From Mytilus trossulus (Eukaryota), in contig NC_086376.1 of assembly GCF_036588685.1 (NCBI RefSeq), positions 36,146,001 to 36,210,000 of the forward strand: a DNA stretch of 64,000 bases, written 5' to 3'. The position numbers and the translations under genes are program-made. Of this stretch, positions 40,966-61,660 are shown in pieces. A model generated the notes under the pieces. It had not been told where the DNA came from and did not search any database. It saw only the letters and a list, made by a program, of their open reading frames with translations. Each line of letters begins with the position of its first letter. Positions within the stretch are counted from its first letter, which is position 1.

Positions 40966-41444
40966 GTGTTTGTACCTCACATATTCATTTTTAAATAACC
41001 GTCGGTTAGGGTACTATACAAAAAGAAAATTGCCCAGCCTGTTTTGTACATCAATGTCAAGAAAGTTAAGACACCGGCAAATATGTGTTATTCCACCACA
41101 TTCTGTGTGTTTGACCAAATTCGGGAGCATGTAATTCAGTTGTCAGTTATTGTCGTTTGTTTCTGTATATCATAGTTATTTTTCGTTTTTTTTTTCTTAC
41201 ATTTTTCAATTCGGGCCTGTTATATCTTGCTTTGCGGTATAGGATTAGCTCATTGTTGAAGACCTAACGGTGACATGTAGATGGTAACGTCAACGTCATT
41301 TGGTCTGTGGTTGGCAAGCATACCGCATCTTACCCATCATATATCTCTATATCATAGAGGTAACAATGCACTTTACAAAACGAAAAAATCCGACAAAATG
41401 CTCACCACAGAAGTAAAAACATATCAAATTAGGTGAAACTGTTT

Positions 41445-41725
41445 TTCATGGACCAAAACTAATGTATCGCCTCTTTGACTAAAACTACTAATATATCACC
41501 TTGCGGACTTAACTATAATGTATTGCCTCGTGGACTAAAATTCATGTATCGCCGTGTGGACTTAAACTAACATGGCTTGTGAATTAAAAATAATGTACAG
41601 CATCTTGAAGTAAAACCAATATAATGCCTTGTTGAAAAACACTAATGTACCGTCTTGTGGACTAAAACTTATATACCGCATCGTTGACTAAAACTAATGT
41701 ATCGCCTTGTGGACTAAAACTAATA
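41445..41725. repeat. Degenerate ~30-bp tandem repeat
   Basis: Recurring gtggactaaaactaatgtatcgcc. Confidence 0.8.
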
Positions 41726-42091
41726 AAGTGATGCACCGCCATACGGTATACCTTAAATCAAAAGCCAGAATCAAAAGGTAAAATATTTTTTCCAGGACAT
41801 GGTTGCATTAGAAGAATCAGAGGAAGAAATACTACTATAAAATAAGGTTGCCCCTCCGTAAGAGGGGAGCCATAATTTAATCCAGTATTCAAGTTGAAAC
41901 TGATATGTCTTATCTTTTTAACTAGTTTCCCCCATAATATACATATCCAAAATAGCAATTTGCAGTTTGTTTACGCCAAATTCGTTTTTAGAATAAAAGG
42001 AAAAGAGTAAATAAATAAATGTTTATCCTAATAAAACAATAGTTAATAAACCCATATATATCTGACTTATATTACCAAAAAGATTAATTTA

Positions 42092-45000
42092 TTATCCAAT
42101 AATGTTTTTGTGTTCCTCCTTTATCTTTTTATCAATTCCTTGCATCTTTTTCATGACTGTGCCAAGTTGTTTATTGAACACGTTCACATCGTTTGAAGTT
42201 GCACTTTTCAATTCTTTTTTCAATTCTTTTGACTGAAACGTGTCGCCCATTTTCACTTGTGAATGCTCCATGTAATCTAAAAGTTTTAGGAGATCAACTT
42301 CCAGATGCATCAGATTTGAGTACATAGGAGAGTTAGCACCATATAAACCGTCCATCGAGACACTGTTCTCCTTATTTTTTTCTGTTACTATTTCGTCTAC
42401 CTGATTCTTTATTGTATCAGCCATTTTTTCTATTTTTAACGCTAATTTTGGTGAAGCACCTTTTTTCATCGTATTTGCGCGATATAGCATCTTTTCAATT
42501 TTCGATTTGATTAAATTGGCTTCTTTCTTGACTTGAAATCCCTTTTCCAGTATTGTTCCGGTCGCTTTTTTAATAATTGCGTTTGCCGTTGTGTTTGCAG
42601 TATTATTGGCTGTTATTTCGGCTGGTTTCTTTGCAATAAGTTTTTTAAGAACACTTAGTGTGTCGTTTTTCCCCCCGCTTTTTACTTTTGGTTTTGTCCC
42701 ATTTTTCTTCAATGCTTTTTGCTTAACCATTTTTTTCACATCCTTCATAATTACTTTATGTAAAGGTCTCTTCTTTTTAGAGTCAAACATTTTAGTAAGT
42801 TTATTTTTTTTCAGTGCTTTTCCTTTCACCATTTTTTTCACATCCTTCACAATTGCTTTATGTATAGGCGTCTTCTTTTTCAAGCCAAGTATTCCTGCAA
42901 TTTTATTTTGTTTCAGTGCTCCACCCTTCACAAATTTTTTCACATCCTTCAAAATTGCTATCTTTAAGGGTGTTTTCTTTTTCGAGCCAAGTATTCCTGC
43001 AAGTTTATTTTGTTTCAGTGCTTTTCCCTTCACAAATTTTTTCACATCATTCAAAATTGCTTTATTTAAAGGTGTTTTCTTTTTTGAGCCAAGTATTCCT
43101 GCAACTTTATTTTGTTTCAGGGCTGATCCCTTAACAAATTTTTTCACATCCTTCAAAATTGCTTTATTTAAAGTTGTCTTCTTTTTCAAACCAGGTTTTT
43201 CTGCAAGTTTATTTTGTTTCAGTGCGTCTCCTTTAACAATCTTTTTCACATCCTTCATAATTTCTTTCTGTAAAGGTGTCTTATTTTTGATAGATTTAAG
43301 TATTTCTGTAGTTGTTTTTTTCTTCAGTGCTTTCCCTTTAACAATCTTTTTTACATCCTTAATTATAGCTTTCATAAGTTGTTTTTTCTCACTAGGCTTT
43401 GTCTTTTTTCCAAACACCTTCTCCTTCTTGACTTCTGCTATTACCAGTTTCTTCAACAATTTTTCCGCTGCTTTCTGTTTAGGTTTTTTCTTGTCAGAAT
43501 TTGATTTTACCCCAAACATATTTTGAAGTGTCTGTTTTTTCGAGACAGGTTTTGCTTGTTTTTTCGAAACAGGTTTTCCTGCAAGTATATTTTGTTTTTG
43601 TGCGTTTCCTTTAACAATCTTTTTTACATCCTTCATGATTTTTTTATGTAAAGGTGTGCTCTTTTTTATCGACTTCAGTATTTCTGTAGTTGTTTTTTTC
43701 TTCAGTGCTTTCCCTTTAACAATCTTTGTCACGTCCTTAAGTATTGCTTTCATAAGTTGTTTTTTCTCGCTAGGCTTTGTATTTTGAAACACCTTCTCCT
43801 TCTTGACTTCTGCTATGACGAGTTTCTTCACCAATTTTTCAGCTGCTTTCTGTTTAGGTTTTTTCTTGTCAGAATTTGATTCCTCCCCAAACAAATTTTT
43901 AAGTGTCGTCTTTTTCGAGATAGGTTTTCCTGCTAGTATATTTTGTTTCTGTGCGTTTCCTGTAACAATCTTTTTTACATCCTTCATAATTTTTTTATGT
44001 AAAGGTGTGTTCTTTTTTATAGACTTTAGTATTTCTGTAGTTGTTTTTTTCTTTAGGTCTTTCCCTTTTACAATCTTTGTCACGTCCTTTAGTATTGCTT
44101 TCATAAGTTGTTTTTTCTCACTAGGCTTTGTCTTTTGAAACACCTTCTCCTTCTTGATTTCTGCTTTTACAAGTTTCTTCACCAATTTTTCCGCTGCTTT
44201 TTGTTTAGGTTTTTTCTTGTCTGAACTTGATTTCCCTCCAAACAAATTTTTAAGTGTCTTCTTTATCGAGATAGGTTTTCCTGCAAGTATATTTTGTTTC
44301 AGTGCGTTTCCTTTAACAATCTTTTTTACATCCTTCATAATTTTTTTATGTAAAGGTGTGTTCTTTTTTATAGACTTTAGTATTTCTGTAGTTGTTTTTT
44401 TCTTTAGGTCTTTCCCTTTTACAATCTTTGTCACGTCCTTTAGTATTGCTTTCATAAGTTGTTTTTTCTCACTTGGCTTTGTCTTTTGAAACACCTTCTC
44501 CTTCTTGATTTCTGCTTTTACAAGTTTCTTCACCAATTTTTCCGCTGCTTTCTGTTTAGGCTTTTTCTTGTCAGAACTTGATTTTCCCCCAAACAAATTT
44601 TGAATCGCCGTCTTTTTCGAGACAGGTTTTCCTGTAAGTACATTTTGTTTCAGTGCGTTTCCTTTTACAATTTTTTTTACATCCTTCATAATTTTTTTAT
44701 GTAAAGGTGTGTTCTTTTTTATCGACTTAAGTATTTCTGTAGTTGTTTTTTTCTTCAGTTCTTTCCCTTTAACAATCTTTGTCACGTCCTTAAGTATTGC
44801 TTTCATAAGTTGTTTTTTCTCACTAGGCGTTGTCTTTTGAAACACCTTCTCCTTCTTGACTTCTGCTATGACGAGTTTCTTCACCAATTTTTCCGCTGCC
44901 TTCTGTTTAGGTTTTTTCTTGTCAGAATTTGATTCCTTCCCAAACAAATTCTTAAGTGTCTTCTTTTTCGAGACAGGTTTTCCTGCAGATTTATTTTGTT

Positions 45001-48000
45001 TCAGTGCGTTTCCTTTAACAATCTTTTTTACATCCTTCATAATTTCTTTCTGTAAAGGTGTCTTATTTTTTATTGAATTAAGTATTTCTGTAGTTGTTTT
45101 TTTCTTCAGTTCTTTCCCTTTAACAATCTTTTTCACGTCCTTAATTATTGCTTTCATAAGTTGTTTTTTAGCACTAGCCTTGGTTTTTTTTCCAAACACC
45201 TTCTCCTTCTTGACTTCTGCTATAACGAGTTTCTTCAACAATTTTTCTGCTGCTTTCTGTTTAGGTTTTTTCTTGTCAGAATTTGATTTGCCCCCAAACA
45301 TATTTAGAAGTGTCTCCTTTTTCGAGGCAGCTTTTCCTGCAATTTTGATTTGTTTCAGTTCGTTCCCTTTAACAATCTTTTTTACATTCTTCATAATTTC
45401 CTTTTGTAAAGGTGTCTTATTTTGTATAGACTTAAGTATTTCTGTTGTCGTTTTTTTCTCCAGTGCTTTCCCTTTAACAATCTTTTTCACGTCCTTAATT
45501 ATTGCTTTCAAAAGTTGTTTTTTCGCACTAGGCTTTATTTTTTTTCCAAGCACATTCTCCTTCTTAACTTCTGCTATCACGAGTTTCTTCAACAATTTTT
45601 CCGCTGCTTTCTGTTTAGGTTTTTTCTTGTCAGAACTTGCTTTTCCTCCAAACATATTTTTAAGTATTGCCTTATTAACACTTTTGGTTGTCTTTGAATT
45701 TGATGTTGGTTCCAATATTTGTCCTATTATAGCATCTTTTTTCAATGCTTTACCTTTCACAATTTTCGTTACAATTTTAACCACTCCTTTCTTCGTAGGT
45801 TTCTTTTTTTCTTTGTTGATTGTCTTCGTAATATTACCTTGTTTTTCTTTAATTTCAGATATTACTTTTGTGCCATTTAGTGGTTGTGCGTCAATTTTCT
45901 TTTGCTCACTTTTCAATGTTTTAATCATTTTCATCATCTTATTTAATGCACTCTTTTCTTGAATGTTGGTCTTATTGTTTATTTGCTCAGTAGCTTGCTT
46001 TCTCTTAAGTTCTGCTTTGAGTGTCTTTTCGTTAGCTTTTTTTATTTTCTCCGCCGCAGCTTTGAGTTTCTTTTCGGTAGCCTTCTCTAATTTCTTTACT
46101 GCAACTTTTAGTTTCTTCATTTTATCCTTTTCCAACTTCTTAAGCTTTGTTTTGAGTTTCTTTGTTTTTTGCTTTTCCATCTTCTCAATCTTAGCTTTGA
46201 GTTTCATTGTTTTTGCCTGTCCCAATTCCTTAATCTTATTTTTGAGTAACTTTGTTTCAGCCTGTTTCATCTTTTTAAGTTCAGTTTTGAGTTTTTTTGT
46301 TTTAACCTGTTTCAACTTCTCAAGTTTGGTCTCGATTTTTTTGCTTTTAACTTCTTGTATTCGATCTAGCTTATTTTTTAGTTCCTTTGTTTTAACTTCT
46401 TGTTTCAATTTATTTAACTCTTCTTTGAGAATTTCTGATTTTGGATGTTTAATTTTCCCAATTTCTGTTGACAGATTCATTGCTTTATCGAGTTTTGATG
46501 TCGTTGGTGAAATGATGTCCGATGTCTTTCCTTTAAGTATTGCCTGGATGTCTGATTTTAGATCCTTTGCTTTCGAATTAAGTTGCACTGATTTAATTGG
46601 CTGAGTTGTCAAGGACTTTATCTTTTCTCCTGTAATAGCTTTACTTATAACGATAGGGGATTTTTTCATTTCCTTCACCATTTTCTTGATTTTCTTTGTT
46701 TCAACCTTTTTTAGTTTATCTAGATTAGCTTTGATTTTCTTTGTTTCAACTTTCTTGATCTCCTTAATCTTTTCTTTCACTTTCTTTGTTTCAACTTTCT
46801 TTAATTCCTTCAGTTTAGCCTTAAGTTCGATTTTTTTGACTGCTTGCACTTTCTTAGGTTTTGTACTGATTTTTTTAATTGCAACCTGTTTTACCTTCTC
46901 AAGTTTTTCCTTGACTTTTTCCATTTTATCCTGTTTTATGTTTTTAAGCTTAGCAGTTAGGTCCTTTGTTTCAACCTTCTTTTCTTTCTTGAGCTCAGTT
47001 TTGAGATTCTCTTTAGCTTGTTTTATTTTCTTAACGAGTTTGACTTTCTGAACTGCCGTAACAGTTGGGGTGGTAATAACAATTGGTTTACTTTCCATTT
47101 TCTTCAATTTCTTCTCGATTTTCTTTGTTCCAACTTCTTTTATCTTCTCTAGCTTAGCTTTGATTTTCTTTGTTTCAGCTTTCTTGATCTTTACAATCTT
47201 ATCCTTGACTTTCTTTGTTTCTGCTTTTTTCAATTTCTTAACTTTAGCCTTCAGTTCTTTTCTTTTAACTGCCTGTACTTTCTTGGGTTCTGATTTTATT
47301 TTTATTTTCGCAACCTGTACTACTTTCTTAAGTTTTTCCTTGACGTCATTCATTTTTTCCTGTTTTATGTGTTTAATCTTAGCAGTTAGTTTCTTTGTTT
47401 CAACCTGTTTTGTTTTCTCAAGCTTGGTGTCGAGTTTCTTTGCAGCCTTCTTTATTTCCTTAAGCTCTACCTTGATTTCACTTTTTTTGGCCTGTTTTAT
47501 TTCATTAAGCTTAGCAACAATTTTCTTTTTTTCCACCTGTTTTATTTCTTTAAGCTTAGTATTGAGTTTGTTTATTTTAGTCTGTTGTTTGTCTTTTGGT
47601 TCCGTCTTGATATTACTTGTCTCCTTCTGTTTTATGTTATTAATCTTTGCATTGAGGGACTTTGTTTTGACTTGTTCAATTTGCTTCAGTTTGTTATCGA
47701 GTTTCTTTGTTTCTTCCTGTTTCATTTCCTGTAGCTTAGCTTTGATAATCTTTGCTTGTGTCTCCTCTATCTTCTTAGGTATAGCTTCGATTTTCTCTAT
47801 TTTAGCCTGTTTAATTTTCTCTACCTTTGCAACGATTTCATTTTTCTTCGCCTGCTTGATTTGTTTAAGTTCTGCATTTATTTTATTTTTCCCAACCTCT
47901 TTCATTTTCTCCAACTTAGTGTTGAGTTTATTTATTTTAGCCTGTTGCTTTTTCTTAGGTTTAGTTTTGATAACTGATATTTTAGCCTCTTTTACCTTCT

Positions 48001-49358
48001 CAAGTTTTGCCTTAAGATTCTCTGTTTTAGCCTGTTTTATGCTTTCAAGTTTGGTATCGAGTTTCTTTATTTCAGCGTTTTTCACTTTCTTTAGCTCTGT
48101 TTTAATATTCTTTGCTTCAATCTTTTGTACCTTCTGACTATCAGCTTTGAGTTCCTTTGTTTTAAGTTGTTTTATTTTTTCGAGCTTAACATTTAGTTTC
48201 TTTGTTTCATCATGTTTTATTGTCTTAAGCTTGTCGGCTAGTTTCACTTTTTCAACTTTTTTCATTTTATCAAGCAGATTGTTAAGTTTCTTAGTTTCAA
48301 CCTTTTGTATCTTCTTCGGCTCATCTTTTATTTTCTTAGATTGAGTTTCCTTTATTTTTCCAATCTTCAAATCGAGTTTACTGGTTTCAGCTACTTTCAC
48401 TTTCTCAAGCTTTTTAAGAAGTTTTTTGGTTTCTATCTTTTTAACTTTTTTTAACTTAGCAATAACATTCTTTATTGCTGGTTGTTTTAATTTTATCTTG
48501 ATTGGTTTAACAATGAGTTTCTTAGCTGCAGTTTTAAGGTTTATCTTTACATTCACTTTCTTTTTCTTTGGATCATTCTTAATTCCTTTTTTTGTATCAT
48601 TCTTTTTCTTTGTTCCATTACTAAGTACGTTTGTTATAGTCTTAGTTTTAATCTTCTCTTTCCCAGACTTATATTTAGTGTCTTCCTTTATCTTCTCTGT
48701 CTTTGTTACTTTACCATTCTTTTTTGACTTAGCTTTAGTCACATTCTTTTTGCTTGACTTCTTTTTACTTCCTTTCTTGGTCTTCTTTGAATTAGCTTTA
48801 GTCACTTTCTTTGTGCCTGACTTAGATGTTGCTTTGGTGGGTTTGTTTATAATTTTTTTCGATTTCTTCACTTCTTTCTTTTTTATCTTGGTTGAAGTTG
48901 CTTTTGACTTTGGATTCTTTGATTTTACTACATTAGTTACCGTTGCCTTTTGAGAAACAGTGGTTGATTTGGGTTTCGGGGTTATTTTCTTTTGTAGTTT
49001 TTTAATCTCCGTTTGTAGGGATGTCAGTGTTTTATTTTTCTTGCTTGTCTGACCATTCTTAGTTATTACTACCTTACTCTTCTTCCCAGTAGAACGTGGT
49101 ATTGTTGGGATTCCTTTCGTGATTGCCCCCTTTTTAAACTCTATAGGTTCGATCGCTTTTATCTCAGATTTTCCATCCGCCTTAGAGTTGAGCAGCTGTA
49201 AAACTTGCGATTTGATTTTTTCAGATGGACCAGTCGTTGGCTGCTTTGGACCTGCCGAAGATGTACCAGTCGTTGGCTTCTTTGGACCTGCCGAAGATAT
49301 ACCATTGGCTGTGCGTGTATGTCGTAGAAGATTTTGCTGTAGTCCGTATCCTGGCCAT
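42092..49358 (-). CDS. 7267-nt terminal exon of the Lys-rich protein
   Basis: Unbroken frame. The ORF-track start at 48871 is a GTG; the frame stays open for 162 more codons up to the splice acceptor. Confidence 0.92.
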
Positions 49359-52300
49359 CTGAAAGAGAGAACATATAATTGCTAAACTGGTATGGTGAAA
49401 TCCCTAGATAAAAAACAGATGTTTCTAGGTTACCATGTCCCAAAAGATGCTATTCTATGCAAAATGAAGGAATACACAGAAGGATTGCTATTAGTGGGTA
49501 GAATTTTTGTATGGACTGAACTTGTGATTCAGATGAATTTAAACTTGATTCTAAAATAGCAACCATATTTTTACAAAGCCATGTTCTAATTAGCACAACA
49601 TATGTTTGACACATGCGCACACGGTTGCTGTTTTTATTGTCGTCATTGTTATTCTAATAAAATATATACATTTTAGCAACTAACATATAATATATTTTTT
49701 ATCATTTAATTGTTTGTCAAACAACATATATATTTAGCCTGCTTTTGGTTTTTAGATATGAAAATGTTATGTACAGACTCCACTGACAGCCGAACATTTT
49801 TTATGTATTTTCGTACGCTTCATCCTTTTAAAATACTGTTTCTAATATGACGTCCTTATAACGCTTTGTAAACAAAGCCGTGTTCTAATGAGCACAAAAT
49901 AAGTTTGACACATGCGCACGAACTTACTGTTTATATTAACTTTATTTCCATCGTTAAGCAGCCAGCATAAACTTTTATTATATATTTTTATGAAACAATA
50001 TATACAGTCATGAGACAAAAGTGAGTTCCCTATCATTTCAACTAAAATCGATATTTTTCAAAAAATTATTACGAAGTATTAAATGTATAAGCGATTTTTA
50101 TAAAATAGATACCAAAAGATGTAAAAATGTCTGAAGTTTTATTGTTTATTTAGTCATAATTTTCTTGAGTTTCATTTTCACCATCTGATGAGTTAAACAC
50201 AAATGCAAATTTTTACAATTTTAATTTGGTTAGAATAATAGCAAACTTTTCAAGAAATATTTTTTATTTTGTTCATCTCATCAGAAAATTAAAATAAGCG
50301 TGAATACTATAATAACCGAATAAACAATAAAACTTCAGACATTTCTACATCTTTCGGTATCTATTTGATGAAAATCCCTCATACAGTTACTTCGTAATAA
50401 TTTTTGGAAAAATATCGATTTTAGTTGAAATGATTGGACTTTTTTTGACTGGGACCTCACTTTTGTCTAATGACTGTATTTAGGGACGACACCAAAAGAT
50501 TGATGTAGGATAAACAACTTAAATCAAATAGTTTGGGGGTGGGGGTCAACATTGCTGCAAGTTTTGTTTATCCAAAATCGATTTTACATATATCCATTAT
50601 GGTCAATCAATTTTTCCCAAATTAAGTTAAGAAGGGGGGTGTTGGGGTCCGTGAAAAAACTATGTGAATTAAGTTTTTTTTTATCCTTCATTGTACTTTT
50701 GATGTCGTCCCTTACCCTGCTTGTAGTTTTTAAACTTATCAAATATGAACTACAATGCACAGACTCCTTGAGGTGGAAACGGGAACAGCCGAACGTTTTT
50801 ACGGTAATTTCATACGCTTCGACCTATAAGAATACTGTATTTGTCTAATTAGAATCAAAATAATTCCTTCATGTCATGCTCTATGCTCATTTTAACATGG
50901 GTAGGCATTATATTTGACCACATTTTACACCTCGCCAAACGCTCAGTGTAAAATATCGACAAATATAATGCATACCCATGTTAAAATGAGCATAGAGCAT
51001 GACATGAAGGAATTATTTCTTAAACATGCCCTAATAGAATCAAAATAATTCCCTCGTGTCATGCTCTAAATGAACACAGAGCATGACATGAAGGAATTGT
51101 TTTTTCATCAATTTGCCGTTTCAGAATCTAAAGGACTATGGGCACATCATTGTGTGTATCCCAATATGAACAGAAACTTTACATCTGATTGGTCTTACAT
51201 TTTTGTAATTTTTAGATCTGATACGTAGTTTTTATGCCCCACCTACGATAGTAGAGGGGCATTATGTTTTTTGGTCTGTGCGTCCATTCGTTCGTCCGTC
51301 CGTTCCGTTCGTCCATCTGTCCCGCTTCAGTTTAAAGTTTTTGGTCCAGGTAGTTTTTGTTGAAATTGCAGTCCAATCAACTTGAAACTTAGTACACATG
51401 TGCCCTATGATATGATCTTTCTAATTTTTATGCCAAATTACAGTTTTTATCCCAATTTCACGGTACACTGAACATTGAAAATGATAGTGCATATTTCAGG
51501 TTTAACATTTAAGTTTTGGTCAAGGTAGTTTTTGATGAAGTTGAAGTCCATTCAACTTGAAACTTAGTATACATGTTCCCTATGATGTGATCTCTCTAAT
51601 CTAATCTATATTTTACTCCAATTTCGCGGTCCACTAAACATAGAAAAATATAGAGCGAGTGGGGCATCCATGTACTATGGACACATTCTTGTTCGTTATG
51701 TTATTTCTGATACGTTTAAAAATATTTCTCCCCATCCGTCCCCACCTGTCAGAAACTGAATTGGCTCAATTATTTACTTCTAATGCATCGAATGCGAATC
51801 GAATTCCCAAATCGCATTCACACATTCTAATTTTTTAATTCCAAAATGATTCGAATTGGCTAATTCGAATTATCTAATTCGCATTAGAACTACGATTGTG
51901 AATACGAATTAAAAATAAACGTCGTTTGGACAATAAAGCGAATTTGACGCGCATTGTATTAATTCAAATTAGAATTGACGTTAGGACGTAAAACGTTTCG
52001 AATGCGAATTAAACTAATTCGAATTAGTTAATGCGAATCGAATTTGAATTATGTGATAACTCTAGACAAACAAATTGTGCGAATGGATTTTGTCAAGTTA
52101 CAATACATAGCAAACTACATAGCATGGGGCCTCCATGACGAATAACGGTAAAAATTCTTGCAAAATGAAGTTAACGGTTGTGCATGAAGATAAAATGTAC
52201 ACTTTTTTAGACGATAAAAAAATAGACTGATTTTGACCCATCACGACGCGATTTTTTTTTCCAAATATATTTTGCTAACGAAAGGTATTTGCGACCGACC

Positions 52301-55300
52301 TCTGACGAATCACCGTGACGATAAGAATATTTTGATGAATCCCGGTAAAATTTTAACCAATTTGACGCTAACGGTAGCAGAAATTGACAGTTTGACTCCT
52401 GACGGCAAAGAGCATTACTATACTCTGCTGTATGCTGATGATACAGTCTTCTTTTGAAAGATATATTATGTTTAATTGAAGGTTTTTTGAGAATAAATCC
52501 AGTCAAGGGACAGTGAAATTTCCCGAGCCGCAAGGCGAGGAAAATTCGGTCCAGAGACTGGTATTTTTCCCAAATACCCCTCCCTGATATAACATAACAT
52601 AACATAATATATCTGTTAGATCAAACCGAATAGATTTGGATTGAAACTTGCTCTCTGTACAGGTACTTGTAAGCTGTAATTCATAAACATTTAATGTATA
52701 ATTTTGATACTAAGTGGATATTATCATAGAACCGCGGGAATAACACATGTACTAATACGCGTAAGCCGGCTTTTGTTAGTTTATATCCGAAATTTTTTGG
52801 CGGGAAGATGCTCGCGAGGGTAAAAAAGAAATATCCAAAATGGCAAATACCATGGTATTTTAGACATATTCACCGGCAGTGGTGAAAAACAGGCAAAATT
52901 AGCACCCAAGATATGTTCAATTACAGCCTTCGCGCTTAATCTTTGATTCCACAAGCCAGAAGACCAAATTTTAGTTGGATGCAAGAAGTTGGCTTGTAGA
53001 GAAGATTTTTTTATGTGTTTTGTTATTTTATTTTGCCATGTGATTATGGACTTTCCGATTAGATTTTCCTCTAATTTCAGTACTTTTGTGATTTTACTTT
53101 TTAGAAGCACGAGAGCAATTTTACTAGCTAATGTCGTAGGACTTGCGGTTAAGCGTGAAGAGTGCAATCAATTGAAATATGTTAAAAATATCCCTCCATC
53201 TCCTTTCAGAGATAAATGGGTAGAACTTTTTTACTAAAATATCAATTTTGGGATTTATTTATTGGGTGAATCAATGCAAATTGTGTCATTTAATTCATTT
53301 ATTGTATGTAAACATGCAACGTAAAACACTTTATTTAGTTGCAAGGAAAGACACAAAGCATGTTGTGGATCAGGATTGGGTCACTTATTTTTTGTATTCT
53401 GGTTTAAGGGCATTTTTCTCTATGTTTAAAAAAACGATCATTTTTCAAAATTCTCATTTTCTCTTTAATATTTTAACAGAGATATTCGTTGAAACTCTAC
53501 TTGGGTAACCGACGCTTTAATAGCATAAATACTAAAAGATTTATTTAAGGTTGTACACCTCTGAGGAGCCAAAAATTTCTAGAATTTGAATGAATGAATG
53601 AACTTTATTCTCACAAAACTACATGTCATAGTTACAGAGAAAATATATATTTACAATTACATATATGTATATATAAGCATGCACATGTGTGAATAAATAA
53701 CGTAACTTAACTTGGAGGACTGACTTTCACCTGTATTATTTTTATAAACTTACATAATTTTTCTAAAACAATAGTATTGTCTGAATTAAATAAACTATTA
53801 AATTTGTATGTACTTGGATTTTTACAGCAATATTCAGGTAAAAAGTTCTTTCTCTCTAAATCTGAAGATTTACAAGTCATTATATAATGATTTAGAACTT
53901 GACATACAGGTACATGTACTGTACACTCGTGTATTAACTTATGTATTAATTAAGAAATAATTCATGGGGGCTGGAATATATCGTGATTTTACCACGGGTT
54001 GGCCCTTTATGACAAATATTTTACCCTGAGCGATAGCGAGGGGTAAAATATCGGCATAAAGGGTCAACCCGTGGTAAAATCTAGATATATTCAAGCCCCC
54101 ATGAATTATTTCGATTCTAATAGGACAAAAACGGCATTTTTGGGGGGTCGAAGAGCTCTATGTGGAGGCAAATATTTGCCGTTCCCATAAATTAACGCAC
54201 TTTTAGATTGGCGTTAACAACGGAGCAAACAGAATAAGTGACATGCTCAAACTATTTACAATAACGTATTTAGATGAATTTTACTGATAATTTACTTATA
54301 TGTGTTTTATGCATAAAAAAATGGACTTATATCACATTTGAGCATCGTTTGTTAACGTTTCCTTGTTGTGATGATTTTCGGTATCAGAAGCGTGTATTTT
54401 CCCGTAAAATGCTTAAATTATGACGTCGGGTACTTCATTCATACAAAAACTTTCTCGTTTCTCGTTTTGTTTATATAGATTAGACCGTTGGTTTTCCCGT
54501 TTGAATGGTTTTACACTAGTAATTTTGGGGCCCTTTATAGCTTGTTGTTCGGTGTGAGCCAAGGCTCCGTGTTGAAGGCCGTACTTTAACCTATAATGGT
54601 TTACTTTTTAAATTGTTACTTGGATGGAGAGTTGTCTCATTGGCACTCACACCACATCTTCCTATATCTATATATGACGTTGGAGTACGATTGGAACAGC
54701 CAATGCAATATATTCATATTTTACCACGGGTGTGTACTCAAAGCGTTTGAAGCACGTCATGTTAGAATTTATACCATACTTGACCTCTAGATGTTTTTTG
54801 TTTTTGTTTGGTGGGCTGCTGTTTCATTACAATACTCCTTTAAATTTCTCTATTCGCGTTGTAATCACTTTTTTTAGAATTTCACATTGACATTAATTAT
54901 GATAGAATTAAACTTTTATTCGGGTCAATGATAATTGAATAAAATTGGGAGGCTCCCAGTTTTAAAATTCACAGTTTTTATAGCTGACTATGCGGTATGG
55001 GCTTTTCTCATTGTTGAAGACCGTACGGTGACCTATAGTAGTAATTTAAATGTCTGTGTCATGTTTGTCTCTTGTGGAGAGTTGTCTCATTGGCGATTAT
55101 ATCACATCTTCTTTTTTGTTGTCAGAAAACAAAACAAATCTTATAAAGGAGAATCTTCAATATGCTTTAAAAGGTGGTACGTGAACACTACAGGGAGATA
55201 ACTCTGTAAAGTCAGCTAAACGTTTTAATTACGTCGTGTTGTAAAGGAAATATTAAGCTTCTCAGTGATCAAAATTGGTGTTTGTTAAACTGCTTTATAA

Positions 55301-58300
55301 CCAGTGTAATTTTCCTGACAAAACGGTTGGTTCAAAATTTATGTAATTTTTATATTTTTGGTTAAAGTTAACCCTTTCCTTAAGGTGGTACCTAACACTA
55401 CAGGGAGATAACTCTGTAAAATCAGCTAAACGTTTTAATGACGTTGTGTTGTTAAGGGAATATTAAGCTTCTCACTGATCAAAATTGGTGTTTGTCAAAC
55501 TGCTATATAACCAGTGTAATTTTTCTGACAAAACGGTTGGTTCAAATTTTTTTAAATATTTATATTTTTGTTAAAGGGTCAAAGTAAATGCATTGTCAAA
55601 ATATTATGAAAATTAAACGAGCCAAATTAATTTTAGTGAAAGTGTTGGGTACCACCTTAATAAATACTTTGTCAAATTTTAATGAAAATTAAACGAGCCA
55701 AATTAATTTTAGTGAAAGTGTTGGGTACCACCTTAATGCGGGGTTCACACATTGCCGATTATTGCTCCCGTTTGAGTTCAGACAGCAATACGACACGAAA
55801 AGTGAAAAAGTCGGATTAGTATCCTCAATTATCTGGAATGTCCTATCATTGTCTGAACACAGTCGTTTTAGTTCGTAACAGATTCTTACGGGTCGGGAAG
55901 GGTCCGAATAGTTCGGCAAAGCACCCCGACAGTTAGGTGCGTCCCGTAACATTCGGGACAACTCAGCCGATTTTGTCTAGTCGGATTCCAATCGTGGCTA
56001 TGTCGTGACAGATTCTGCTGTATCGGATCGAATTCCGAACAATGTCTTGTGTATTCTGGACGGTGTCTTGTGGAACGTGAATGATCTGGAGTAATTTTTC
56101 ATAGTTGTTTTTCTGCCGATTGAGTCCAGATTGCATCCAGATCTTGTCGATTGCGAACCGTTTTTTGCCGAAACCATTCCGAAACAGTCCCGTTATTAAT
56201 ACGAAATTAATCAATGATACCCACGTCAGAGTCCCGATAATTACAGAATACAATACGACTGAGACCAGACAAAGCCGTTTGCAATGCGATAGAGCGGACC
56301 GTGATAGGATTACGTTCCGTCAGTAACTGATCATCCCGAATATGCCGACAGTTTTCTAACGGATATCTTCCGTCAGCGTCGGTTCACTGTCTGGTCACTG
56401 TCTGATCTCTGTCGGATTACGTTCTGTAGAGTCGGGACGAAGTCGTGACATACTCGGTCGAATTTTACCTGGCGAAAAATAGAAATCGGGTTAGAAGCGG
56501 CTTCAGAACGGGATTGTCGGTACTAATTCGCTTAGAAACGGTTGAATATCGTCGCTTCCTGGACACTATCTGATTGTTGTCGTGATCAAATTATTTTTTT
56601 TTTAAAATTTTTATTTAAGTTTGAATTTCCATCCACGATTCACAGGATCTTGATCAGACTTTTGATAAATTTTAATCGGGAATGGTCCTGTCGAGGACGG
56701 TAGTAAAAATCGTGAATGTGTGACCCCAGCTTTAGCTAAATTAAGGATGCCTTTGTCCAGACAGAGAAACTATACCATAATTATTTCAATTTTTGATTTG
56801 GCAAAAACGATTGAATTAATAGCGAGATGACTGGACATATTACCTATGCATAATTTCATAGGAAAATTATAACTATACATTTTTTTCACCACAAAACAAC
56901 ACGGGGTGATACAGGAAAGTCATGGTATATCCCGACTCATTCCTTATTCTTGCTCAAAAGGAAGTTTTTTGTTAGTCTTGTATTATTTTAATTTTAGTTT
57001 CTTGTGTACAATTTGGAAATTAGTATGGCGTTCATTGTCACTGAACTAGTATATATTTGTTTAGGGGCCAGCTGAAGGACGCCTCCGGGTGCGGGAATTT
57101 CTCGCTACATTGAAGGCCTGTTGGTGACCTTCTGCTGTTGTTTTTTTTTTTTTTTTTGTTGGGTTTTTTTATTTGGTCGGGTTGTTGTCTCTTTGACACA
57201 TTCCTAATTTCCATTCTCAATTTTATTGTATATCACATTACACATGTTTTAATGATACCAAATTGTAGGTCAATAAAAATTCACAGATCGTTTGACCATC
57301 ATGAAAAAAATAACAACCATGACATTAGGATAATATGCTGTACCATCTTTACGACGGACGAACCGGACATTTCTATACCATAATACGTGCCGTGAACATT
57401 TTTGCATGAAATATTTGCCACTGGACGTAAGCAACCGACAAGCAATCAATTTATAGGACATAGTCTTGGTATTAAGCTGGCATTTATGGTAGTGCCTTCC
57501 TCTTATCAAAAATGATAATTGACATGCATTAATTATAAAAAAGGGATAGTCAATCATCTTGAGATTGCTACACGTGTAACTATACGATATTTTGTTGGAG
57601 ATCTCACAGAAACAGTAATGTGCTTTATTTCTTATGCCATATATATGGTTTTATTAGACTTTTATCCTGTTAGAATCAAATGCACTAATATTAATGGTGT
57701 AGATGTTAGATGCGGGAGAAACAGAAATTGGAGCATCGAAAATCCACATTACGTTTCTAACTACGGAAAATTACACGCATTACGTCCCAAAAAAAAGTGA
57801 CGTTTAGGGAGAATTCAAACGCTTAACGTCGCGCCAAGAGTTAACTCCCTTGAAACTGTATCAAATGCCCTTAAACTAGATTAACTACGAAACATTCAGA
57901 TAAAGTTTGAGTGCATTTGCGTGCAGTCTTCACACTGAACCACACCCCTGTAAAAATCATATCTACAGGCCAACATAATCTAACTTAAATTTCCTTTTGA
58001 TTAAGCTCTTGGCTTGTAGATTTAAAAGTTCATGGCAAAGACTAAATTTGGTCCAGTAGATTGATTGATTGATTGTTGGTTGCTTAACGTCCTGTGGTAA
58101 ATATTTCATGCATGTTCAGGACGAAAAGGTCCGATATATATATGTTAGAGGACCAGTTCAACTTTTAAGGAGTATTTGTAATTGTCGATTGAACAACTAT
58201 CCTCCGGAGTCCAAATTACGCAAAGCCACAGGCCCAGAAGCCCTGGCTCGTAAATTTGCTCTCGGGCCTGTAAAAATCGTCTGCAGGCCAACAGAATCTA

Positions 58301-61038
58301 ACAAAAAAAAATCCAAAAATTGAGATCAGAGCCTGTAGATTTTAAAGTTCATAATAAAGACTAAATTAACTTGTATGTATTAATAACTATGGGCTTTTAT
58401 CAATCAATGAATTGAAACCACGCCGTACAGTGAGATATTAAGACCCCGAAATAAAAAAATGTGAACAATTCAAACGAGAAAATCAAGGGCCTTATCTATG
58501 ACAGAACAAAAAACAAAAGAATACTATTATTACAGACAGCAACCAACGATAACGACTGAATTACTGGCTTCTTATGATCTTACTTGGGACAGGTATTTAA
58601 AGAAAATGGTGGGATTAAACATGTTTGTGATCGTTCAAGTTGACAACCTTCACCTAATTTAGAACAATGGTGTAACAGTAAAATGTTAGAACAAATTCTA
58701 AAATTTAGAAATTGCTTGACTCATTTGATTACAGTAAACGTCCTTTAACAGCAACCCCTAAAGTAAGGCTCCTTATACTTAAGGGGGATCCTGGGTATAA
58801 ATGATTTTTTTTTCCTAATATAGGATTTCGATATATTTTTTCATAAATGAACTTTATCATATACTTAAAAGAAAAATGAAATAAAAAAATGGATTCACCG
58901 TTCATTTAAGCTAAAATCTGCCTCTGGAAGAAGTATACATTTTTGTTAATGTCCTTTTTTTCTGTTGAACTAATAGGAGAAAAAGAGGAAATATCGAAAT
59001 AAAAAAATAACCTAATATAAGAAATTGCTTAAATTTTACAATTATTTAGTTTATGTACAGCTTATTTGAAAACAATAATAAAAAATATAGGTCACCGATG
59101 AGTTAAAAAAATATTTCAAATTTAAGGCCAAAAAATGGCATTTTTGCACCAAAGGGAGATAATTTGGAGCTTTTTCAATTTTTAAAGTCATCTGGGGCCA
59201 AACCAAATCATTTTTTGGGGTTGTTTTTTGTACCATATCATAAAGTAACAACTAATAGTGTAATAAATAAAATTTGTAATGAAAATATAAAGGTTTAATT
59301 TTTTGCTAAAATTTTTGTACCCACGAGCCACCTTAAGAGTTAGGATCCATAGTCTTATCATCTATTTTATGATAGTATGATAATAAACCCCTACCGGGAG
59401 GGATTGTGTATGATATTCATACGATGAAGACATAATGATCTTTCAATCAGTTTAGTTGAGGTCTGGAGCTGGTATGTCAGTTAACTGCTAGTAGTCTGTT
59501 GTTATATATGTATTATTGTCATTTTATTTATTTTCTTTTGTTACATCTTATGACATCGGACTCGAACTTCTCTTGAACTGAATTTTTATGTGCGTATTGT
59601 TATGCGTTTACTTTTCTAGATTGGCTAGAGGTGTAGGGGGAGGGTTGATATCTCATAAACATGTGAGGTCCAACCCCGACGACATTTTTGCGCCTGTCCC
59701 AAGTCAGTTGCCTCTGACCTTAGTTAGTCTTGTATGATTCCTAATTTTAGTTTCTTGTGTATAATTCGGAGTTCAGTATGACGTCAATTATCACTGTACT
59801 AGTAAACATATTTTTAAAGGGCCAGCTGAAGGATGCTTACGGGTGCGGGAATTGTCTTGCTACATTGTTATTGAAGACCCATTGGTGGCCTACGGCTGTT
59901 GTCTGCTCTATGGTCGGGTTGTTGTCGCTTTGACACATTACCCATTTCCTTTCTCAATTTTATTTTATTGTTATGGTTAGGTAATAGAATGTTCTAGGTT
60001 AGGGTTATGTTTCAGGGTTATAACTATTGTTAGGTTTTGCTGTTGTTTATGTTAAGTTTTTGGGGTTAAGGACAGTATAGTGTAGCTCTATGGGTTGGAA
60101 CTCCTAAACATGACGTTCTATGTTTTTAAATGCCAATTTCTTTGAATATAGAAAGAGTCTGAAAATAATTTAAAAACATGGTGTTTCAAGATGTCACTTT
60201 TATAAAGCCTGTTGTAAAACTTTCCTCTATTTTGTTTGCAAGTCAATCTGCAAACAGTAGAAAACAGTGCTGACCGCTAATGTGAAGGCTCTAACATGCT
60301 AAGGCTATTATTCATTTTTCCGAGCTAAAATAAGTGTTAATATATTATATTATTTTTAATCATACTCTTTTTATAAACTTATATAGGCCTACCAGTTTTT
60401 GTTCAAATATCTTTTGTTCAAATGTACTGAAAGGTGCAATATTTCCCTTTTTATATAAAGATCAATCTGACATCGTTTTTTTATAAAAGGCTTAAAAAAA
60501 TAAAAAGGGTTGAACTTTGGTTTCATTGGCATTGTCTACCCGACCCATTGTTTTTTCCGGTCACAACAGTAAATGGTCATATAATTACTAAAAAAAAATT
60601 ATCGCCAGTATGGCTTCTGTTTTTTTCGACATCAGTTTACTCAGGACAAGGTAAAGGAACCAGAGGCTTCTGGTTTTTGTTCCCGAATTCACTTTGTGCA
60701 ATAATGAATATAACGTTCACTGGTTATAACGTTTACCAAATAAAGTAATTTGTGTAACCAAAAGTTACCGGACTAAAAAATAGAATGCCGGCGGAATCCT
60801 TTAAGTTTGTTAATTCAAAATCATGTATGGAGAATACTTTTGTGTACTCATAGTCTAACGCAGCAGAAGGTTTTTTTTCAAATGTAACACACTATTTCAT
60901 TATCTCAAATATCTACATATACAATATTATCTACATTTTATCTTACTCATTATATAAGTCTTCTCTTGAATTGCGCCTTGCAAAGATGTTAGGCAGTCCA
61001 TAAACCAGGAAAATAACAAAGAAAATCAGTTTTGCCAT
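42092..61038 (-). CDS. Giant secreted lysine-rich repetitive protein, 2452 aa (coding exons 60947-61038 and 42092-49358)
   Basis: Exon A MAKLIFFVIFLVYGLPNIFA-RRNSREDLYN ends GA|GTAAG (phase 2). Exon B has acceptor tctctctttcag at 49359-49360 and is open only in phase 2 (WPGYGLQQNLLRHTRTANG...), running without a stop into the 2259-aa ORF and TAA at 42092-42094. AATAAA overlaps the stop. Confidence 0.82.
50005..50476. mobile_element. Tc1-like foldback MITE with ~150-bp inverted arms
   Basis: TA|CAGTCATGAGACAAAAGTGAG ... CTCACTTTTGTCTAATGACTG|TA. Confidence 0.88.
50483..50711. mobile_element. PIF/Harbinger (Tourist-like) MITE
   Basis: TTA|GGGACGACACCAAAAG ... CTTTTGATGTCGTCCC|TTA. Confidence 0.88.
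50860..51017. repeat. Long near-perfect hairpin element (related hairpins at 52458-52613 and 53956-54110)
   Basis: aataattccttcatgtcatgctctatgctcattttaacatgggta... with its reverse complement; short GC-rich loop. Confidence 0.85.
52370..52455 (+). pseudogene. Small non-LTR reverse-transcriptase fragment
   Basis: YYTLLYADDTVFF (YADD motif), cut off by a hairpin element. Confidence 0.55.
53588..53892 (-). mobile_element. 5'-truncated CR1/L2-group LINE 3' end
   Basis: HYIMTC...R..FLPEY...NPSTYKF..LFN......LEKLCKFI ORF2-like C-terminus, AATAAA plus (CATT)n tail; near-TSD tagaatttga / tagaacttga. Confidence 0.75.
55173..55732. mobile_element. Kolobok-like MITE containing a second intact copy of itself (55384-55656)
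   Basis: Inner copy TTAA|GGTGGTACCTAACACT...AGTGTTGGGTACCACC|TTAA; the outer copy has the same left part before it and the same right end after it. Confidence 0.85.
55737..56731 (+). mobile_element. ~995-bp PIF/Harbinger-like non-autonomous element, copy 1
   Basis: Termini TGCGGGGTTCACACATT / AATGTGTGACCCCAGCT; TAA/TTA flanks; colinear with 62459-63452. Confidence 0.9.
56970..57228 (+). repeat. Interspersed repeat; longer copy at ~59390-59965
   Basis: Shared gttagtcttgta...ggccagctgaagga.gc.t.cgggtgcgggaatt...tttgacacatt block. Confidence 0.75.
58783..59332. mobile_element. Kolobok-like MITE
   Basis: TTAA|GGGGGATCCTGGGTATAA ... TTGTACCCACGAGCCACC|TTAA. Confidence 0.8.
60947..61038 (-). CDS. 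Signal-peptide exon of the Lys-rich protein
   Basis: agtATGG Kozak-like context, basic n-region, hydrophobic core LIFFVIFLVYGL, GTAAGA donor, phase match. Confidence 0.78.
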
Positions 61039-61060: not shown

Positions 61061-61076
61061 TGACGTCATGACGTCA
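61061..61076. promoter_or_regulatory. Two abutting perfect CRE/ATF palindromes (TGACGTCA x2)
   Basis: TGACGTCATGACGTCA begins 23 nt upstream of the ATG at 61038. Confidence 0.45.
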
Positions 61077-61660
61077 CAATATGCTTCAAGTGCTCAACCG
61101 TTGCAGGAATGAAAATATTCCGGAACACAGGTCCGGAAATAACGCATTAATGCACGAGGGTCTTGATGGAGTTTACAGAAAACTTTAGAGAAAATAAGAG
61201 ACAAATAATAATGTAAAGATTACCCGGGAACGATTGGGACACTACTAGAGCGCTCAAATACGAAAAAAAACCAAGTTACATACCTAAAAAAGCGTGTACA
61301 CTATTATATAGGACGAAATCGCTGCAGTCGTAGATCTCGTAGCCTTCCTTCTTTTGTTTAGCTTATATTTGTTTCCTTCAGGGACAGAAATCAAACCAAT
61401 AAAAACATTTCAATATATCCTGGTTCCTTTTGTCGATTAAATCATTTTTTTTTTGTGTTCGTGAAATATTCTTTATTAGCATCATCACTTATTTTCTATT
61501 TAATGTTTATAATTCAGTCTGATTGCCGGTTTGTTTTCCTTTGGTGTAACAATAAAAAAAAACAATATGTCATAAAATCGAATTAATATAATTTACAAAA
61601 TACGTATAAACATACGCTTCGTTCTAGTCTATTTCAAAGACAATCTTTCAATTTTTGTTA

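What the first reader, a model, noticed from the sequence alone, without database searches (positions are those of the whole stretch)
42092..61038. Orphan-looking 2452-aa secreted polycationic protein with a distant signal exon and propeptide
Seen: signal peptide, then RRNSR and LLRHTR|T (R-X-X-R convertase-type sites), then >2300 aa with roughly one residue in three Lys by eye. No Cys was seen, and Arg, Trp and Tyr are nearly absent from the repeats. All of this is encoded by one 7.27-kb exon. Established: DOPA-type mussel foot proteins are Tyr-rich, and histone-H1/protamine-like basic proteins have no signal peptide, so it fits neither. Inference: an undescribed extracellular material (mucus, byssus, periostracum, shell or gamete coat; a coacervate partner for polyanions) or a defence polyprotein.
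Basis: partly seen in the sequence, partly recalled or inferred. Interest (0 to 1): 0.88.

Follow-up and report, generated by a model that had tools for sequence, protein, structure and literature searches.

The report
Giant lysine-rich orphan protein of mussels
A mussel genome carries a real single-copy gene for a 2,452-residue protein that is almost one-third lysine, has no cysteine and probably starts with a secretion signal; its only known relative is an unnamed Mytilus californianus protein, so it may be an undescribed, highly positively charged secreted material, but expression and function remain untested.

Summary
A minus-strand frame is open from 49381 to the stop at 42092-42094, with 30.8% Lys, 0 Cys, 9 Arg, 1 Trp and 7 Tyr. 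A strong acceptor at 49358 matches in phase the donor at 60947 of a 92-nt exon, which encodes a textbook-looking signal peptide.

The ORF is coding:
- The seven 117-aa repeats differ with dN/dS of 0.14-0.65.
- The C-terminal 190 aa are 78% identical to one uncharacterised Mytilus californianus protein. That was the only hit among 1.84 billion representatives.
- All parts are single-copy in the genome.
- Pfam, PDB, ESM Atlas and Foldseek gave nothing.

The signal exon is the only signal-like ATG exon with a GTRAG donor on either strand of the window at the strict threshold.

The model protein is about 274 kDa after signal removal, pI 10.4, net charge +532. It is predicted helical, at low confidence.

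Best reading (0.45): a Mytilus-lineage secreted helical polycation that binds or condenses polyanions, as a matrix, adhesive, mucus or granule scaffold. Rivals are a gamete secretory protein, an intracellular cylicin-like basic protein with a wrong first exon, or an antimicrobial polyprotein.

The composition is unusual and the gene is an orphan. Function and tissue are unknown.

The parts
61061..61076 (-). Two abutting palindromic TGACGTCA (CRE-type) sites, 23-38 nt upstream of the ATG; candidate core promoter element
   Evidence: Read directly; function inferred only.
60947..61038 (-). Exon 1 coding part (92 nt): Met1-Asn30 plus 2 nt of Glu31. Signal peptide residues 1-20 (61038-60979), then RRNSREDLYN. 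Donor GA|gtaaga.
   Evidence: One search gives the sequence, with A at -3 and G at +4 around the ATG; the only signal-like ATG ORF with a GTRAG donor in the window at KD>=2.6, and it is in phase 2; single copy in the genome.
49359..60946 (-). Putative 11.6-kb intron; no Lys-rich or long open frame, and it contains a young high-copy interspersed repeat at about 55.7-56.5 kb
   Evidence: That this stretch is an intron is inferred, not shown by RNA.
42092..49358 (-). Exon 2 (7,267 nt including the stop TAA at 42094-42092): 2,421 codons, 30.8% Lys, no Cys
49223..49358 (-). Lys-free N-terminal segment (WPGYGLQQNLLRHTR...) followed by 2.3 copies of a 12-aa Ser/Thr/Pro/Gly unit (SSAGPKxPTTGx), mucin-like
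   Evidence: 36-nt unit, 93% matches; the first 25 residues of the exon lack Lys.
48503..49060 (-). Lys/Ser/Thr-rich, non-periodic basic region (36% Lys, net +58)
47063..48502 (-). Main block of 15-residue repeats (consensus K-L-K-K-I-K-Q-A-E-T-K-K-L-K-A), with hydrophobic period 3.75 and Pro roughly every 60 residues
46658..47002 (-). Second block of 15-residue repeats (41% Lys)
45998..46402 (-). Third block of 15-residue repeats (39% Lys)
43181..45667 (-). Seven tandem units of about 117 aa (74-96% identical). Each is predicted as four helices. The central units are the most alike.
   Evidence: (dN/dS 0.14-0.65).
42692..43180 (-). About six 34-aa units (KKKTPLNKAILKDVKKFVKGKALKQNKLAGILGS), related to the sub-repeats inside the 117-aa unit; also present in the M. 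californianus protein
42095..42664 (-). Unique, less basic C-terminal domain (190 aa, 17% Lys); the best-conserved part, 78% identical to XP_052100589.1
   Evidence: helical in a low-confidence model.
42088..42093 (-). AATAAA overlapping the stop codon: candidate polyadenylation signal
   Evidence: Read; use not shown.

Best explanation
This is a genuine, single-copy, two-coding-exon gene restricted (as far as the databases show) to Mytilus-type mussels.

Exon 1 supplies a cleavable signal peptide and a short Arg/aromatic, Lys-free leader. The 7.3-kb exon 2 supplies a protein of about 274 kDa with pI about 10.4, built from three nested families of Lys-rich helical repeats (15, 117 and 34 residues) and a conserved, less basic C-terminal domain.

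The most likely mode of action is non-enzymatic. The protein enters the secretory pathway and acts as a very long multivalent polycation. It binds, condenses or cross-links polyanions such as sulfated or acidic glycans and mucins, phospho- or acidic proteins, or negatively charged surfaces. The helices probably form or stabilise on charge neutralisation. Its many primary amines could also serve as cross-linking sites. It would therefore work as a matrix, adhesive, mucus or granule-packing scaffold.

Shown: the ORF, its composition, the repeats, the selective constraint, the orthologue, single-copy status and the absence of known domains. Inferred: use of exon 1, secretion, helix formation, the partner and the tissue.
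For: The gene is real:
- A 2,429-codon open frame.
- dN/dS of 0.14-0.65 between the seven 117-aa units.
- The C-terminal 190 aa are 78% identical (E 1.4e-79) to XP_052100589.1 of M. californianus, which also keeps the 34-aa repeats.

An upstream coding exon is required:
- The frame is open and repeat-like for 364 codons before the first in-frame ATG.
- It begins 8 codons upstream of a strong acceptor.

The signal exon fits:
- It has a +1 n-region, a 12-residue uncharged hydrophobic core, I-F-A at -3..-1, and a Kozak A(-3)/G(+4).
- Its phase matches exon 2.
- It is the only hit of a signal-exon scan in both strands of the window at KD>=2.6. At looser thresholds the scan picks up only a few more, including what looks like the true first exon of the neighbouring A2M-like gene.
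- It is single-copy and not part of a mobile element.
- The 11.6 kb between the two exons holds no Lys-rich frame and does hold a transposon-like repeat.
- The gene upstream appears to end before a retroelement.
- Residues 4-56 are Lys-free across the proposed junction and hold 5 of the 11 Arg, so composition is continuous over the splice.
- A Ser/Thr/Pro unit follows the leader.

Physical character:
- Net charge +532 and pI 10.37.
- Helix predicted throughout the two modelled parts.
- Hydrophobic period 3.75 in the 15-mers.

Precedent for giant secreted Lys-rich repeat proteins acting through charge:
- Flatworm Tmed-ap2 (22.5% Lys) and ap3 (PMC9229212).
- Sandcastle-worm polycations (PMC9999432).
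Against:
- The exon side of the donor (TGA|GT) is non-consensus. My crude matrix scores the site at about -1, although the intron side, GTAAGA, is good.
- Undetected small exons in the 11.6-kb gap cannot be excluded.
- The M. californianus RefSeq model is only 284 aa, starts at an internal Met and has no signal.
- N-glycosylation sequons are not enriched: 16 found, about 13 expected from composition.
- The protein has no Cys, which is uncommon for large extracellular proteins.
- Very Lys-rich helical proteins are usually intracellular (chromatin, nucleolus, sperm head, microtubules).
- Both structure models have low confidence (pLDDT 47 and 59.5), and no fold match was found.
- No polyanionic partner is known.
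Confidence: 0.45

Rival explanations
1. It is a secretory-pathway gamete protein, for example an acrosomal-vesicle or egg-coat component. The polycationic helices would act on the partner gamete's coat or membrane. This is still 'secreted', but with a reproductive rather than a material role.
For: - The signal peptide model is as above.
- Two CRE palindromes lie right at the putative start site, and almost the whole protein sits in one giant exon. From general knowledge, both features are common in male germ-cell genes.
- The gene is restricted to one lineage, and the best-conserved domain is only 78% identical to M. californianus, as expected of fast-evolving reproductive proteins.
Against: - CRE sites are common in many promoters.
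- No baseline divergence between the two species could be measured here, so 'fast' is unproven.
- There is no similarity to known bivalve or gastropod lysins or bindins.
- No expression data are available.
Confidence: 0.12
2. It is an intracellular, very basic helical structural protein. Candidates are a sperm-head or perinuclear-theca protein like the cylicins, a microtubule- or cilium-associated protein, or a nucleolar or chromatin-associated protein. The true 5' exon would lie elsewhere, and the signal-like exon at 61038 would be unrelated.
For: - The composition is Lys-rich and helical, with no Cys and no sequon enrichment.
- The donor at 60947 is weak on the exon side.
- Other ATG exons with phase-2 donors exist in the gap, for example 51316-51243 and 60532-60393.
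- Basic Lys-rich cytoskeletal proteins of the sperm head are a known class (PMC2114806, listed).
Against: - Those alternative exons are short, featureless, and lie in repeat-rich DNA.
- The signal exon is unique in the window, single-copy, in phase, has a good Kozak context, and continues the Lys-free Arg/aromatic composition of the start of exon 2.
- No linker-histone, microtubule-binding or other intracellular domain was detected.
Confidence: 0.2
3. It is a defence polyprotein. The 34-aa and related units would be released by proteolysis as cationic alpha-helical antimicrobial peptides.
For:
- The model has a signal peptide plus a short leader with R-X-X-R motifs.
- A thioester-protein (A2M-like) gene is the neighbour.
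Against: - Only 8 Arg occur in 2,421 residues, and none sits at unit borders, so there are no canonical convertase sites between units.
- There are no acidic spacers.
- The mean helical hydrophobic moment of the 34-aa block is not above shuffled sequence (0.26 against 0.24, z = 1.0), and mean hydrophobicity is very low.
- More than half of the protein is 15-mer and 117-aa architecture, with a conserved non-repeat C-terminal domain. That suggests function as a whole chain.
Confidence: 0.08
4. It is a recently expanded repeat ORF with little or no function, or an assembly artefact of a tandem array.
For: - There are no homologues outside Mytilus.
- The tandem units are very similar, up to 96% identical.
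- The orthologue is annotated only as a 284-aa fragment.
Against: - dN/dS is well below 1 in all 21 unit pairs.
- The frame is intact over 7.3 kb.
- The non-repeat C-terminal domain and the 34-aa repeats are conserved in another species.
- The units are diverged enough (74-96% identical) to be assembled unambiguously.
Confidence: 0.05

Closest known systems
XP_052100589.1, uncharacterized protein LOC127734642 of Mytilus californianus (P0001)
   Same: It is a true orthologue of the 3' end. It is 78% identical over the C-terminal 190 aa (E 1.4e-79) and has the same 34-aa KDVKKxVKGKALK repeats upstream.
   Different: It is annotated as only 284 aa starting at an internal Met, with no signal, no name and no function.
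Flatworm temporary-adhesion proteins ap2/ap3 (e.g. Theama mediterranea Tmed-ap2, Tmed-ap3; PMC9229212)
   Same: They are giant (3,700 to over 7,000 aa) secreted proteins with signal peptides and long tandem repeats. They are very Lys-rich (ap2 is 22.5% Lys) and are proposed to work through positive charge, with release by a polyanion. The resemblance is in how they work.
   Different: No sequence relationship is shown. ap2 carries thrombospondin and trypsin-inhibitor-like Cys domains and heavy predicted O-glycosylation, and ap3 is a Gly/Arg/Lys/His/Ser low-complexity protein. The mussel protein has no Cys or Gly-rich parts, almost no Arg, and is predicted helical.
Mussel foot proteins (MFP-1, -3, -5) and sandcastle-worm polycations Pc-1/2/4/5 (PMC9999432)
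   Same: They are secreted, basic (pI above 8), repetitive, lineage-specific proteins of marine invertebrate adhesives. The worm polycations form complex coacervates with polyanions.
   Different: Those proteins are Gly/Tyr(DOPA)-rich and largely disordered, and they are much smaller. Here Tyr is 0.3%, Gly 3.6% and Lys 31%, with amphipathic-helix periodicity and a mass of 274 kDa.
Lysine-rich matrix proteins (KRMPs) of pearl-oyster shell (PMC3896809, PMC4498902)
   Same: They are secreted, basic, mollusc-specific and named for Lys richness.
   Different: KRMPs are about 10 kDa, with a Lys-Trp lead domain, a Gly-Tyr domain and an RKYKY-type C-terminus. None of these features is present here.
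Cylicins / basic perinuclear-theca proteins of mammalian sperm (PMC2114806); histone H1 and protamine-like proteins
   Same: They have very high Lys content, repetitive basic units, and are encoded largely by one exon (general knowledge).
   Different: They are intracellular and have no signal peptide. H1 and PL proteins have a winged-helix linker-histone domain, which Pfam did not find here. No sequence similarity was detected.

Membership tests
DOPA-type mussel foot proteins (MFP-1/3/5) | High Tyr (DOPA precursor) and Gly content in short tandem peptide repeats | tested here: not met
   There are 6 Tyr in the 2,421 residues of exon 2, and Gly is 3.6%. The repeats are 15, 34 and 117 aa Lys/Leu/Ile/Val/Glu units. 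Family features are taken from PMC9999432.
DOPA-type mussel foot proteins (MFP-1/3/5) | Expression in foot glands and presence in byssus | not testable with these tools
Histone H1 / protamine-like sperm nuclear basic proteins | Linker-histone winged-helix globular domain; no signal peptide | tested here: not met
   Pfam scan of the whole exon-2 protein at E<=1 found no Linker_histone or any other domain. The model has a signal-type N-terminus.
KRMP shell matrix proteins | About 10 kDa; Lys-Trp lead domain after the signal; Gly-Tyr domain; RKYKY-type C-terminus | tested here: not met
   The protein is 274 kDa with 1 Trp, has no Gly/Tyr block, and its C-terminus reads ...EEHKNIIG. The definition is from PMC3896809.
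Secreted protein with a cleavable N-terminal signal peptide | Basic n-region, 8-15 residue uncharged hydrophobic core, small or neutral residues at -3/-1, too short for a membrane anchor | tested here: met
   The sequence is M-A-K, then LIFFVIFLVYGL (12 residues, Kyte-Doolittle 3.2), then P-N-I-F-A|R. This was checked by rule only. No SignalP was available, and use of the exon is not shown.
Proprotein-convertase-processed precursor | Canonical R-X-K/R-R site at the propeptide border | tested here: inconclusive
   Only minimal R-X-X-R motifs are present: RNSR at 22-25 and RHTR at 43-46. Cleavage is not testable here.
Cationic alpha-helical antimicrobial-peptide polyprecursor | Repeated mature units flanked by processing sites; strongly amphipathic helices | tested here: not met
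   There is no Arg or dibasic-Arg at unit borders. The hydrophobic moment of the 34-aa block is 0.26 against 0.24 for shuffled sequence, z = 1.0.
Single alpha-helix (ER/K) domains | Roughly balanced Glu and Lys/Arg in an i, i+4 pattern | tested here: not met
   The 15-mer blocks have 34-41% Lys but only 13-15% Glu+Asp, and they carry conserved Leu/Ile positions.
Pentadecad (15/4) right-handed coiled coils | 15-residue repeat with hydrophobic period 3.75 | tested here: inconclusive
   Periodicity peaks occur at 3.75, 3.0 and 2.5, with consensus hydrophobic positions 2, 5, 8 and 13. The net charge of about +100 per 480 aa argues against self-association without counter-ions. Oligomer state was not tested for this block.

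The most novel reading that the evidence does not exclude
Mussels make a DOPA-free, Cys-free, alpha-helical 'natural polylysine' of about 274 kDa. They would use it as a secreted polyelectrolyte, for example as the cationic partner of a still-unknown polyanion in a coacervate, mucus, byssal, periostracal or gamete-coat material. That would be a class of extracellular material protein with no described counterpart in molluscs.
Probability: 0.3. Interest if true: 0.75.

Novelty: new variant of a known kind. Interest (0 to 1): 0.55.

Why it matters
If the protein is secreted, it would add a chemically very different component to the mussel's well-studied set of extracellular materials. It has only lysine charge and helices, with no DOPA, no disulfides and no glycine-rich disorder.

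It would give materials scientists a natural high-molecular-weight helical polycation to test for coacervation, surface priming or amine-based cross-linking. It is also a clean example of a large lineage-restricted gene built by nested tandem duplication under purifying selection.

If the protein is intracellular instead, it would be an invertebrate counterpart of the cylicin-type basic cytoskeletal proteins. Either way it is currently unannotated or truncated in public annotation.

Tried and rejected
**Homology and fold searches (all negative)**
- Pfam on the whole exon-2 protein: only a sub-threshold DASH_Dad1 stretch.
- Word-indexed protein search with the C-terminal region, the whole length, and the N-terminal 180 aa: all blank. 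These see only proteins of 0.55-1.75 times the query length, so fragments may be missed.
- ESM Atlas on the C-terminal domain and on the 15-mer block: no usable hit.
- PDB sequence searches with the C-terminal domain, the 15-mer block and the 117-aa profile: nothing significant.
- AlphaFold2 of the C-terminal domain (pLDDT 47) and of two 117-aa units (pLDDT 59.5): helices only, too weak for fold assignment. Foldseek against PDB gave no match at E<=0.001, only generic helical repeats.
- Complex prediction on two copies of the C-terminal domain: no verdict, neither for nor against (after two busy answers).

**RNA evidence and orthologous locus (not obtainable)**
I made no further tries and did not use read laying.
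Each exon was searched by reference only.

**Literature**
- Searches for a described Lys-rich giant mussel protein, for the RefSeq identifiers, and for Lys-rich acrosomal proteins of bivalves found nothing relevant.

**Ideas rejected**
- The long + strand ORFs across 42.6-49 kb are antisense by-products of the A-rich coding strand.
- The T-rich stretch at 40-41 kb is not a further exon, because its minus-strand frames are full of stops.
Full report
**1. What is in the sequence**

On the minus strand a single frame is open for 2,429 codons, from 49381 to the stop TAA at 42094-42092. The coding strand is strongly A-rich, with + strand AT skew down to -0.53 across 42-48 kb.

Eight codons into the open frame lies a strong acceptor, ttctctctttcag|A, which puts the exon start at 49358. 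The first in-frame ATG of this exon is 364 codons further on, while the repeat architecture starts long before it. Translation must therefore begin in an upstream exon.

At 61038-60947 there is a 92-nt ATG-initiated exon. It has a good Kozak context (A at -3, G at +4) and encodes MAKLIFFVIFLVYGLPNIFARRNSREDLYN. It ends GA|gtaaga, and the two extra bases plus the A at 49358 make Glu31 and continue exactly into the long frame.

Its composition is K 750, R 11, D 66, E 163, C 0, net charge +532. Without the signal it is 274 kDa with pI 10.37.

**2. Is it a gene?**

Yes, on four grounds.
- The seven tandem units of about 117 aa (43181-45667) differ from one another with dS 0.12-0.32 and dN 0.025-0.14. 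That gives dN/dS of 0.14-0.65 in all 21 pairs, so the protein sequence of the repeats is under purifying selection.
- The non-repetitive C-terminal 190 aa were scored against 1.84 billion representative proteins. They found exactly one relative: XP_052100589.1, 'uncharacterized protein LOC127734642' of Mytilus californianus, at E 1.4e-79 and 78% identity. Its N-terminal part also carries the 34-aa repeats.
- The N-terminal 120 aa, a 117-aa unit, the C-terminal domain and the exon-1/promoter DNA are each found only at this locus in the 1.30-Gb assembly. It is neither a gene family nor a mobile element.
- An AATAAA overlaps the stop codon.

**3. Is exon 1 the right first exon?**

The indirect evidence is reasonably good.
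- I scanned both strands of the window (128 kb) for an ATG ORF with an uncharged 10-residue hydrophobic core (Kyte-Doolittle >=2.6) near its start, followed by a GTRAG donor. The scan returned one hit, this exon, in phase 2. The thresholds were chosen after seeing the candidate.
- Loosened to 1.8, the scan still gives only six ATGs in 128 kb, of which three are in phase 2. Two of those three belong to one signal-like exon at 33987/33969-33899, which is probably the true first exon of the neighbouring minus-strand A2M-like gene. The scan therefore seems to find real signal exons and little else.
- The 11.6 kb between the exons holds no Lys-rich or long frame. It contains a young interspersed repeat with more than a thousand first-look candidates, many of the scored copies 95-99% identical.
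- Upstream of exon 1 lie another copy of that repeat and a retroelement.
- Residues 4-56 of the model contain no Lys at all, in a protein that is 31% Lys, and hold 5 of the 11 Arg plus the only Trp. This odd composition runs straight across the proposed junction.

Against it:
- The exon side of the donor (TGA|GT) is non-consensus, and a crude matrix scores the site at about -1.
- A few other short ATG exons with phase-2 donors exist in the gap.
- Small intervening exons cannot be excluded.

I put the junction at about 0.7.

**4. Anatomy of the protein**

Residue numbers below refer to exon 2; add 31 for the full model.

| Residues | Feature |
|---|---|
| Exon 1, 1-20 | Signal peptide |
| Full model 21-46 | Arg/aromatic leader with two minimal R-X-X-R motifs (RNSR, RHTR); neither is canonical R-X-K/R-R |
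| Start of exon 2 | 2.3 copies of a 12-aa Ser/Thr/Pro/Gly unit |
| 100-285 | Lys/Ser/Thr-rich, non-periodic stretch, 36% Lys |
| 286-765, 786-900, 986-1120 | Three blocks of 15-residue repeats |
| 1231-2059 | Seven 117-aa units |
| about 2060-2222 | About six 34-aa units related to sub-repeats of the 117-aa unit |
| Last 190 | Unique C-terminal domain, 17% Lys, net +11; the best-conserved part |

Details on the repeats:
- The 15-mer consensus is K-L-K-K-I-K-Q-A-E-T-K-K-L-K-A. Conserved hydrophobic residues sit at positions 2, 5, 8 and 13, the Fourier peak is at 3.75 residues, and a Pro occurs roughly every 60 residues.
- Each 117-aa unit is predicted as four helices of about 23, 20, 10 and 24 residues. 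Central units 3-6 are the most alike, as expected of recent unequal crossing-over.
- AlphaFold2 gives helices everywhere it was tried, but at low confidence (pLDDT 47 and 59.5). Foldseek finds no fold match.
- Helical amphipathicity is only modest: mean moment 0.26-0.34 against 0.20-0.24 for shuffled sequence. It is significant for the 15-mers and the 117-aa units but not for the 34-aa units.

**5. What it most likely does**

No enzymatic or binding domain is detectable. What the sequence does specify is an extremely long, multivalent, helix-prone polycation with a distinct conserved C-terminal module and a secretory N-terminus.

With about +0.22 net charges per residue, the helices should be unstable alone and should form on neutralisation by a polyanion. 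Hydrophobic stripes with a 15/4 period could then pack side by side.

The best-supported mechanism is therefore electrostatic. The protein would bind, condense or cross-link polyanionic partners such as sulfated or acidic glycans and mucins, phospho- or acidic proteins, or negatively charged surfaces. This would happen in a secretory granule or outside the cell. Its 750 primary amines would be available for covalent curing.

All of this is inference. The precedent is the charge-based action proposed for the giant Lys-rich flatworm adhesion proteins (PMC9229212) and for the polycation/polyanion coacervates of the sandcastle worm (PMC9999432). The same review notes that no polyanionic protein has yet been identified in mussel plaques.

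I give this reading 0.45. The rivals are:
- A gamete secretory protein, 0.12. The CRE pair at the start site, the single giant exon and the lineage restriction point that way, but all weakly.
- An intracellular cylicin-like basic protein with a wrong first exon, 0.20.
- An antimicrobial polyprotein, 0.08. It is disfavoured by the lack of Arg or any processing motif at unit borders and by the weak amphipathicity of the 34-aa units.
- A functionless or artefactual repeat ORF, 0.05. It is disfavoured by the dN/dS values and the orthologue.

**6. Comparison with known families**

It is not a DOPA-type foot protein: Tyr is 0.3% and Gly 3.6%. It is not an H1 or protamine-like protein: it has no linker-histone domain and does have a signal-type N-terminus. 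It is not a KRMP, which is about 10 kDa with Lys-Trp and Gly-Tyr domains (PMC3896809). It is not an ER/K single alpha-helix, because Glu+Asp is only 13-15% against 34-41% Lys. It resembles the flatworm ap2/ap3 proteins and the worm polycations only in how it would work, not in sequence or domain content.

**7. Novelty and score**

The composition is unusual for a protein of this length. The gene is restricted to Mytilus as far as the databases show. In the only annotated relative it is present merely as a truncated 'uncharacterized' model.

Lineage-specific, repetitive, basic secreted proteins are nevertheless a familiar kind in marine invertebrates, and here both secretion and function remain unproven. 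I therefore class it as a new variant of a known kind, with interest 0.55.

No note on other DNA describes this gene.

Noticed in passing
window 33899-33987 (minus strand): There is a second signal-peptide-like first exon, MTSAAKMNGALMLWITFLTLWTCGVTGAPT, with a GTRAG donor in phase 2. It is probably exon 1 of the minus-strand A2M-like gene whose later exons lie at 1-15 kb. That gene would then span about 34 kb and start 8 kb downstream of the Lys-rich gene's stop.
   Followed up: partly
window 55689-56520 and a diverged copy at about 62000-63200: An interspersed repeat of about 790 bp has at least 1,299 first-look candidates in the genome, and many of the scored copies are 95-99% identical. 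It is a young, high-copy mobile element. One copy sits in the putative intron and one upstream of exon 1. It was not classified.
   Followed up: partly
L010 1199-4891 (+ strand; 65.2-68.9 kb in window numbering): A retroelement carries a gag-like ORF, a CCHC zinc knuckle, RT/RNase H and downstream ORFs that look like a tyrosine recombinase (DIRS-like by eye). It lies between this gene's promoter and the next gene upstream. It was not run against Pfam.
   Followed up: no
window 40060-41000 and 41449-41724: A T-rich, minisatellite-like stretch is open in several + strand frames (51-nt unit at 40325-40453). A 26-nt tandem array of 10.6 copies lies 370 bp downstream of the stop codon. The minus-strand frames are full of stops, so these are not further exons. 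They may be 3'-flank or UTR repeats.
   Followed up: partly
window 61100-61135 (minus strand): Two TTCCGG (ETS-type) cores in 'atttccggacctgtgttccggaat' lie about 60-90 nt upstream of the ATG, next to the double CRE. This is a TATA-less, ETS+CRE type of promoter by eye. It was not tested.
   Followed up: no
window about 38080-38220: There is a run of 137 N (a gap or masked stretch) in the intergenic region.
   Followed up: no
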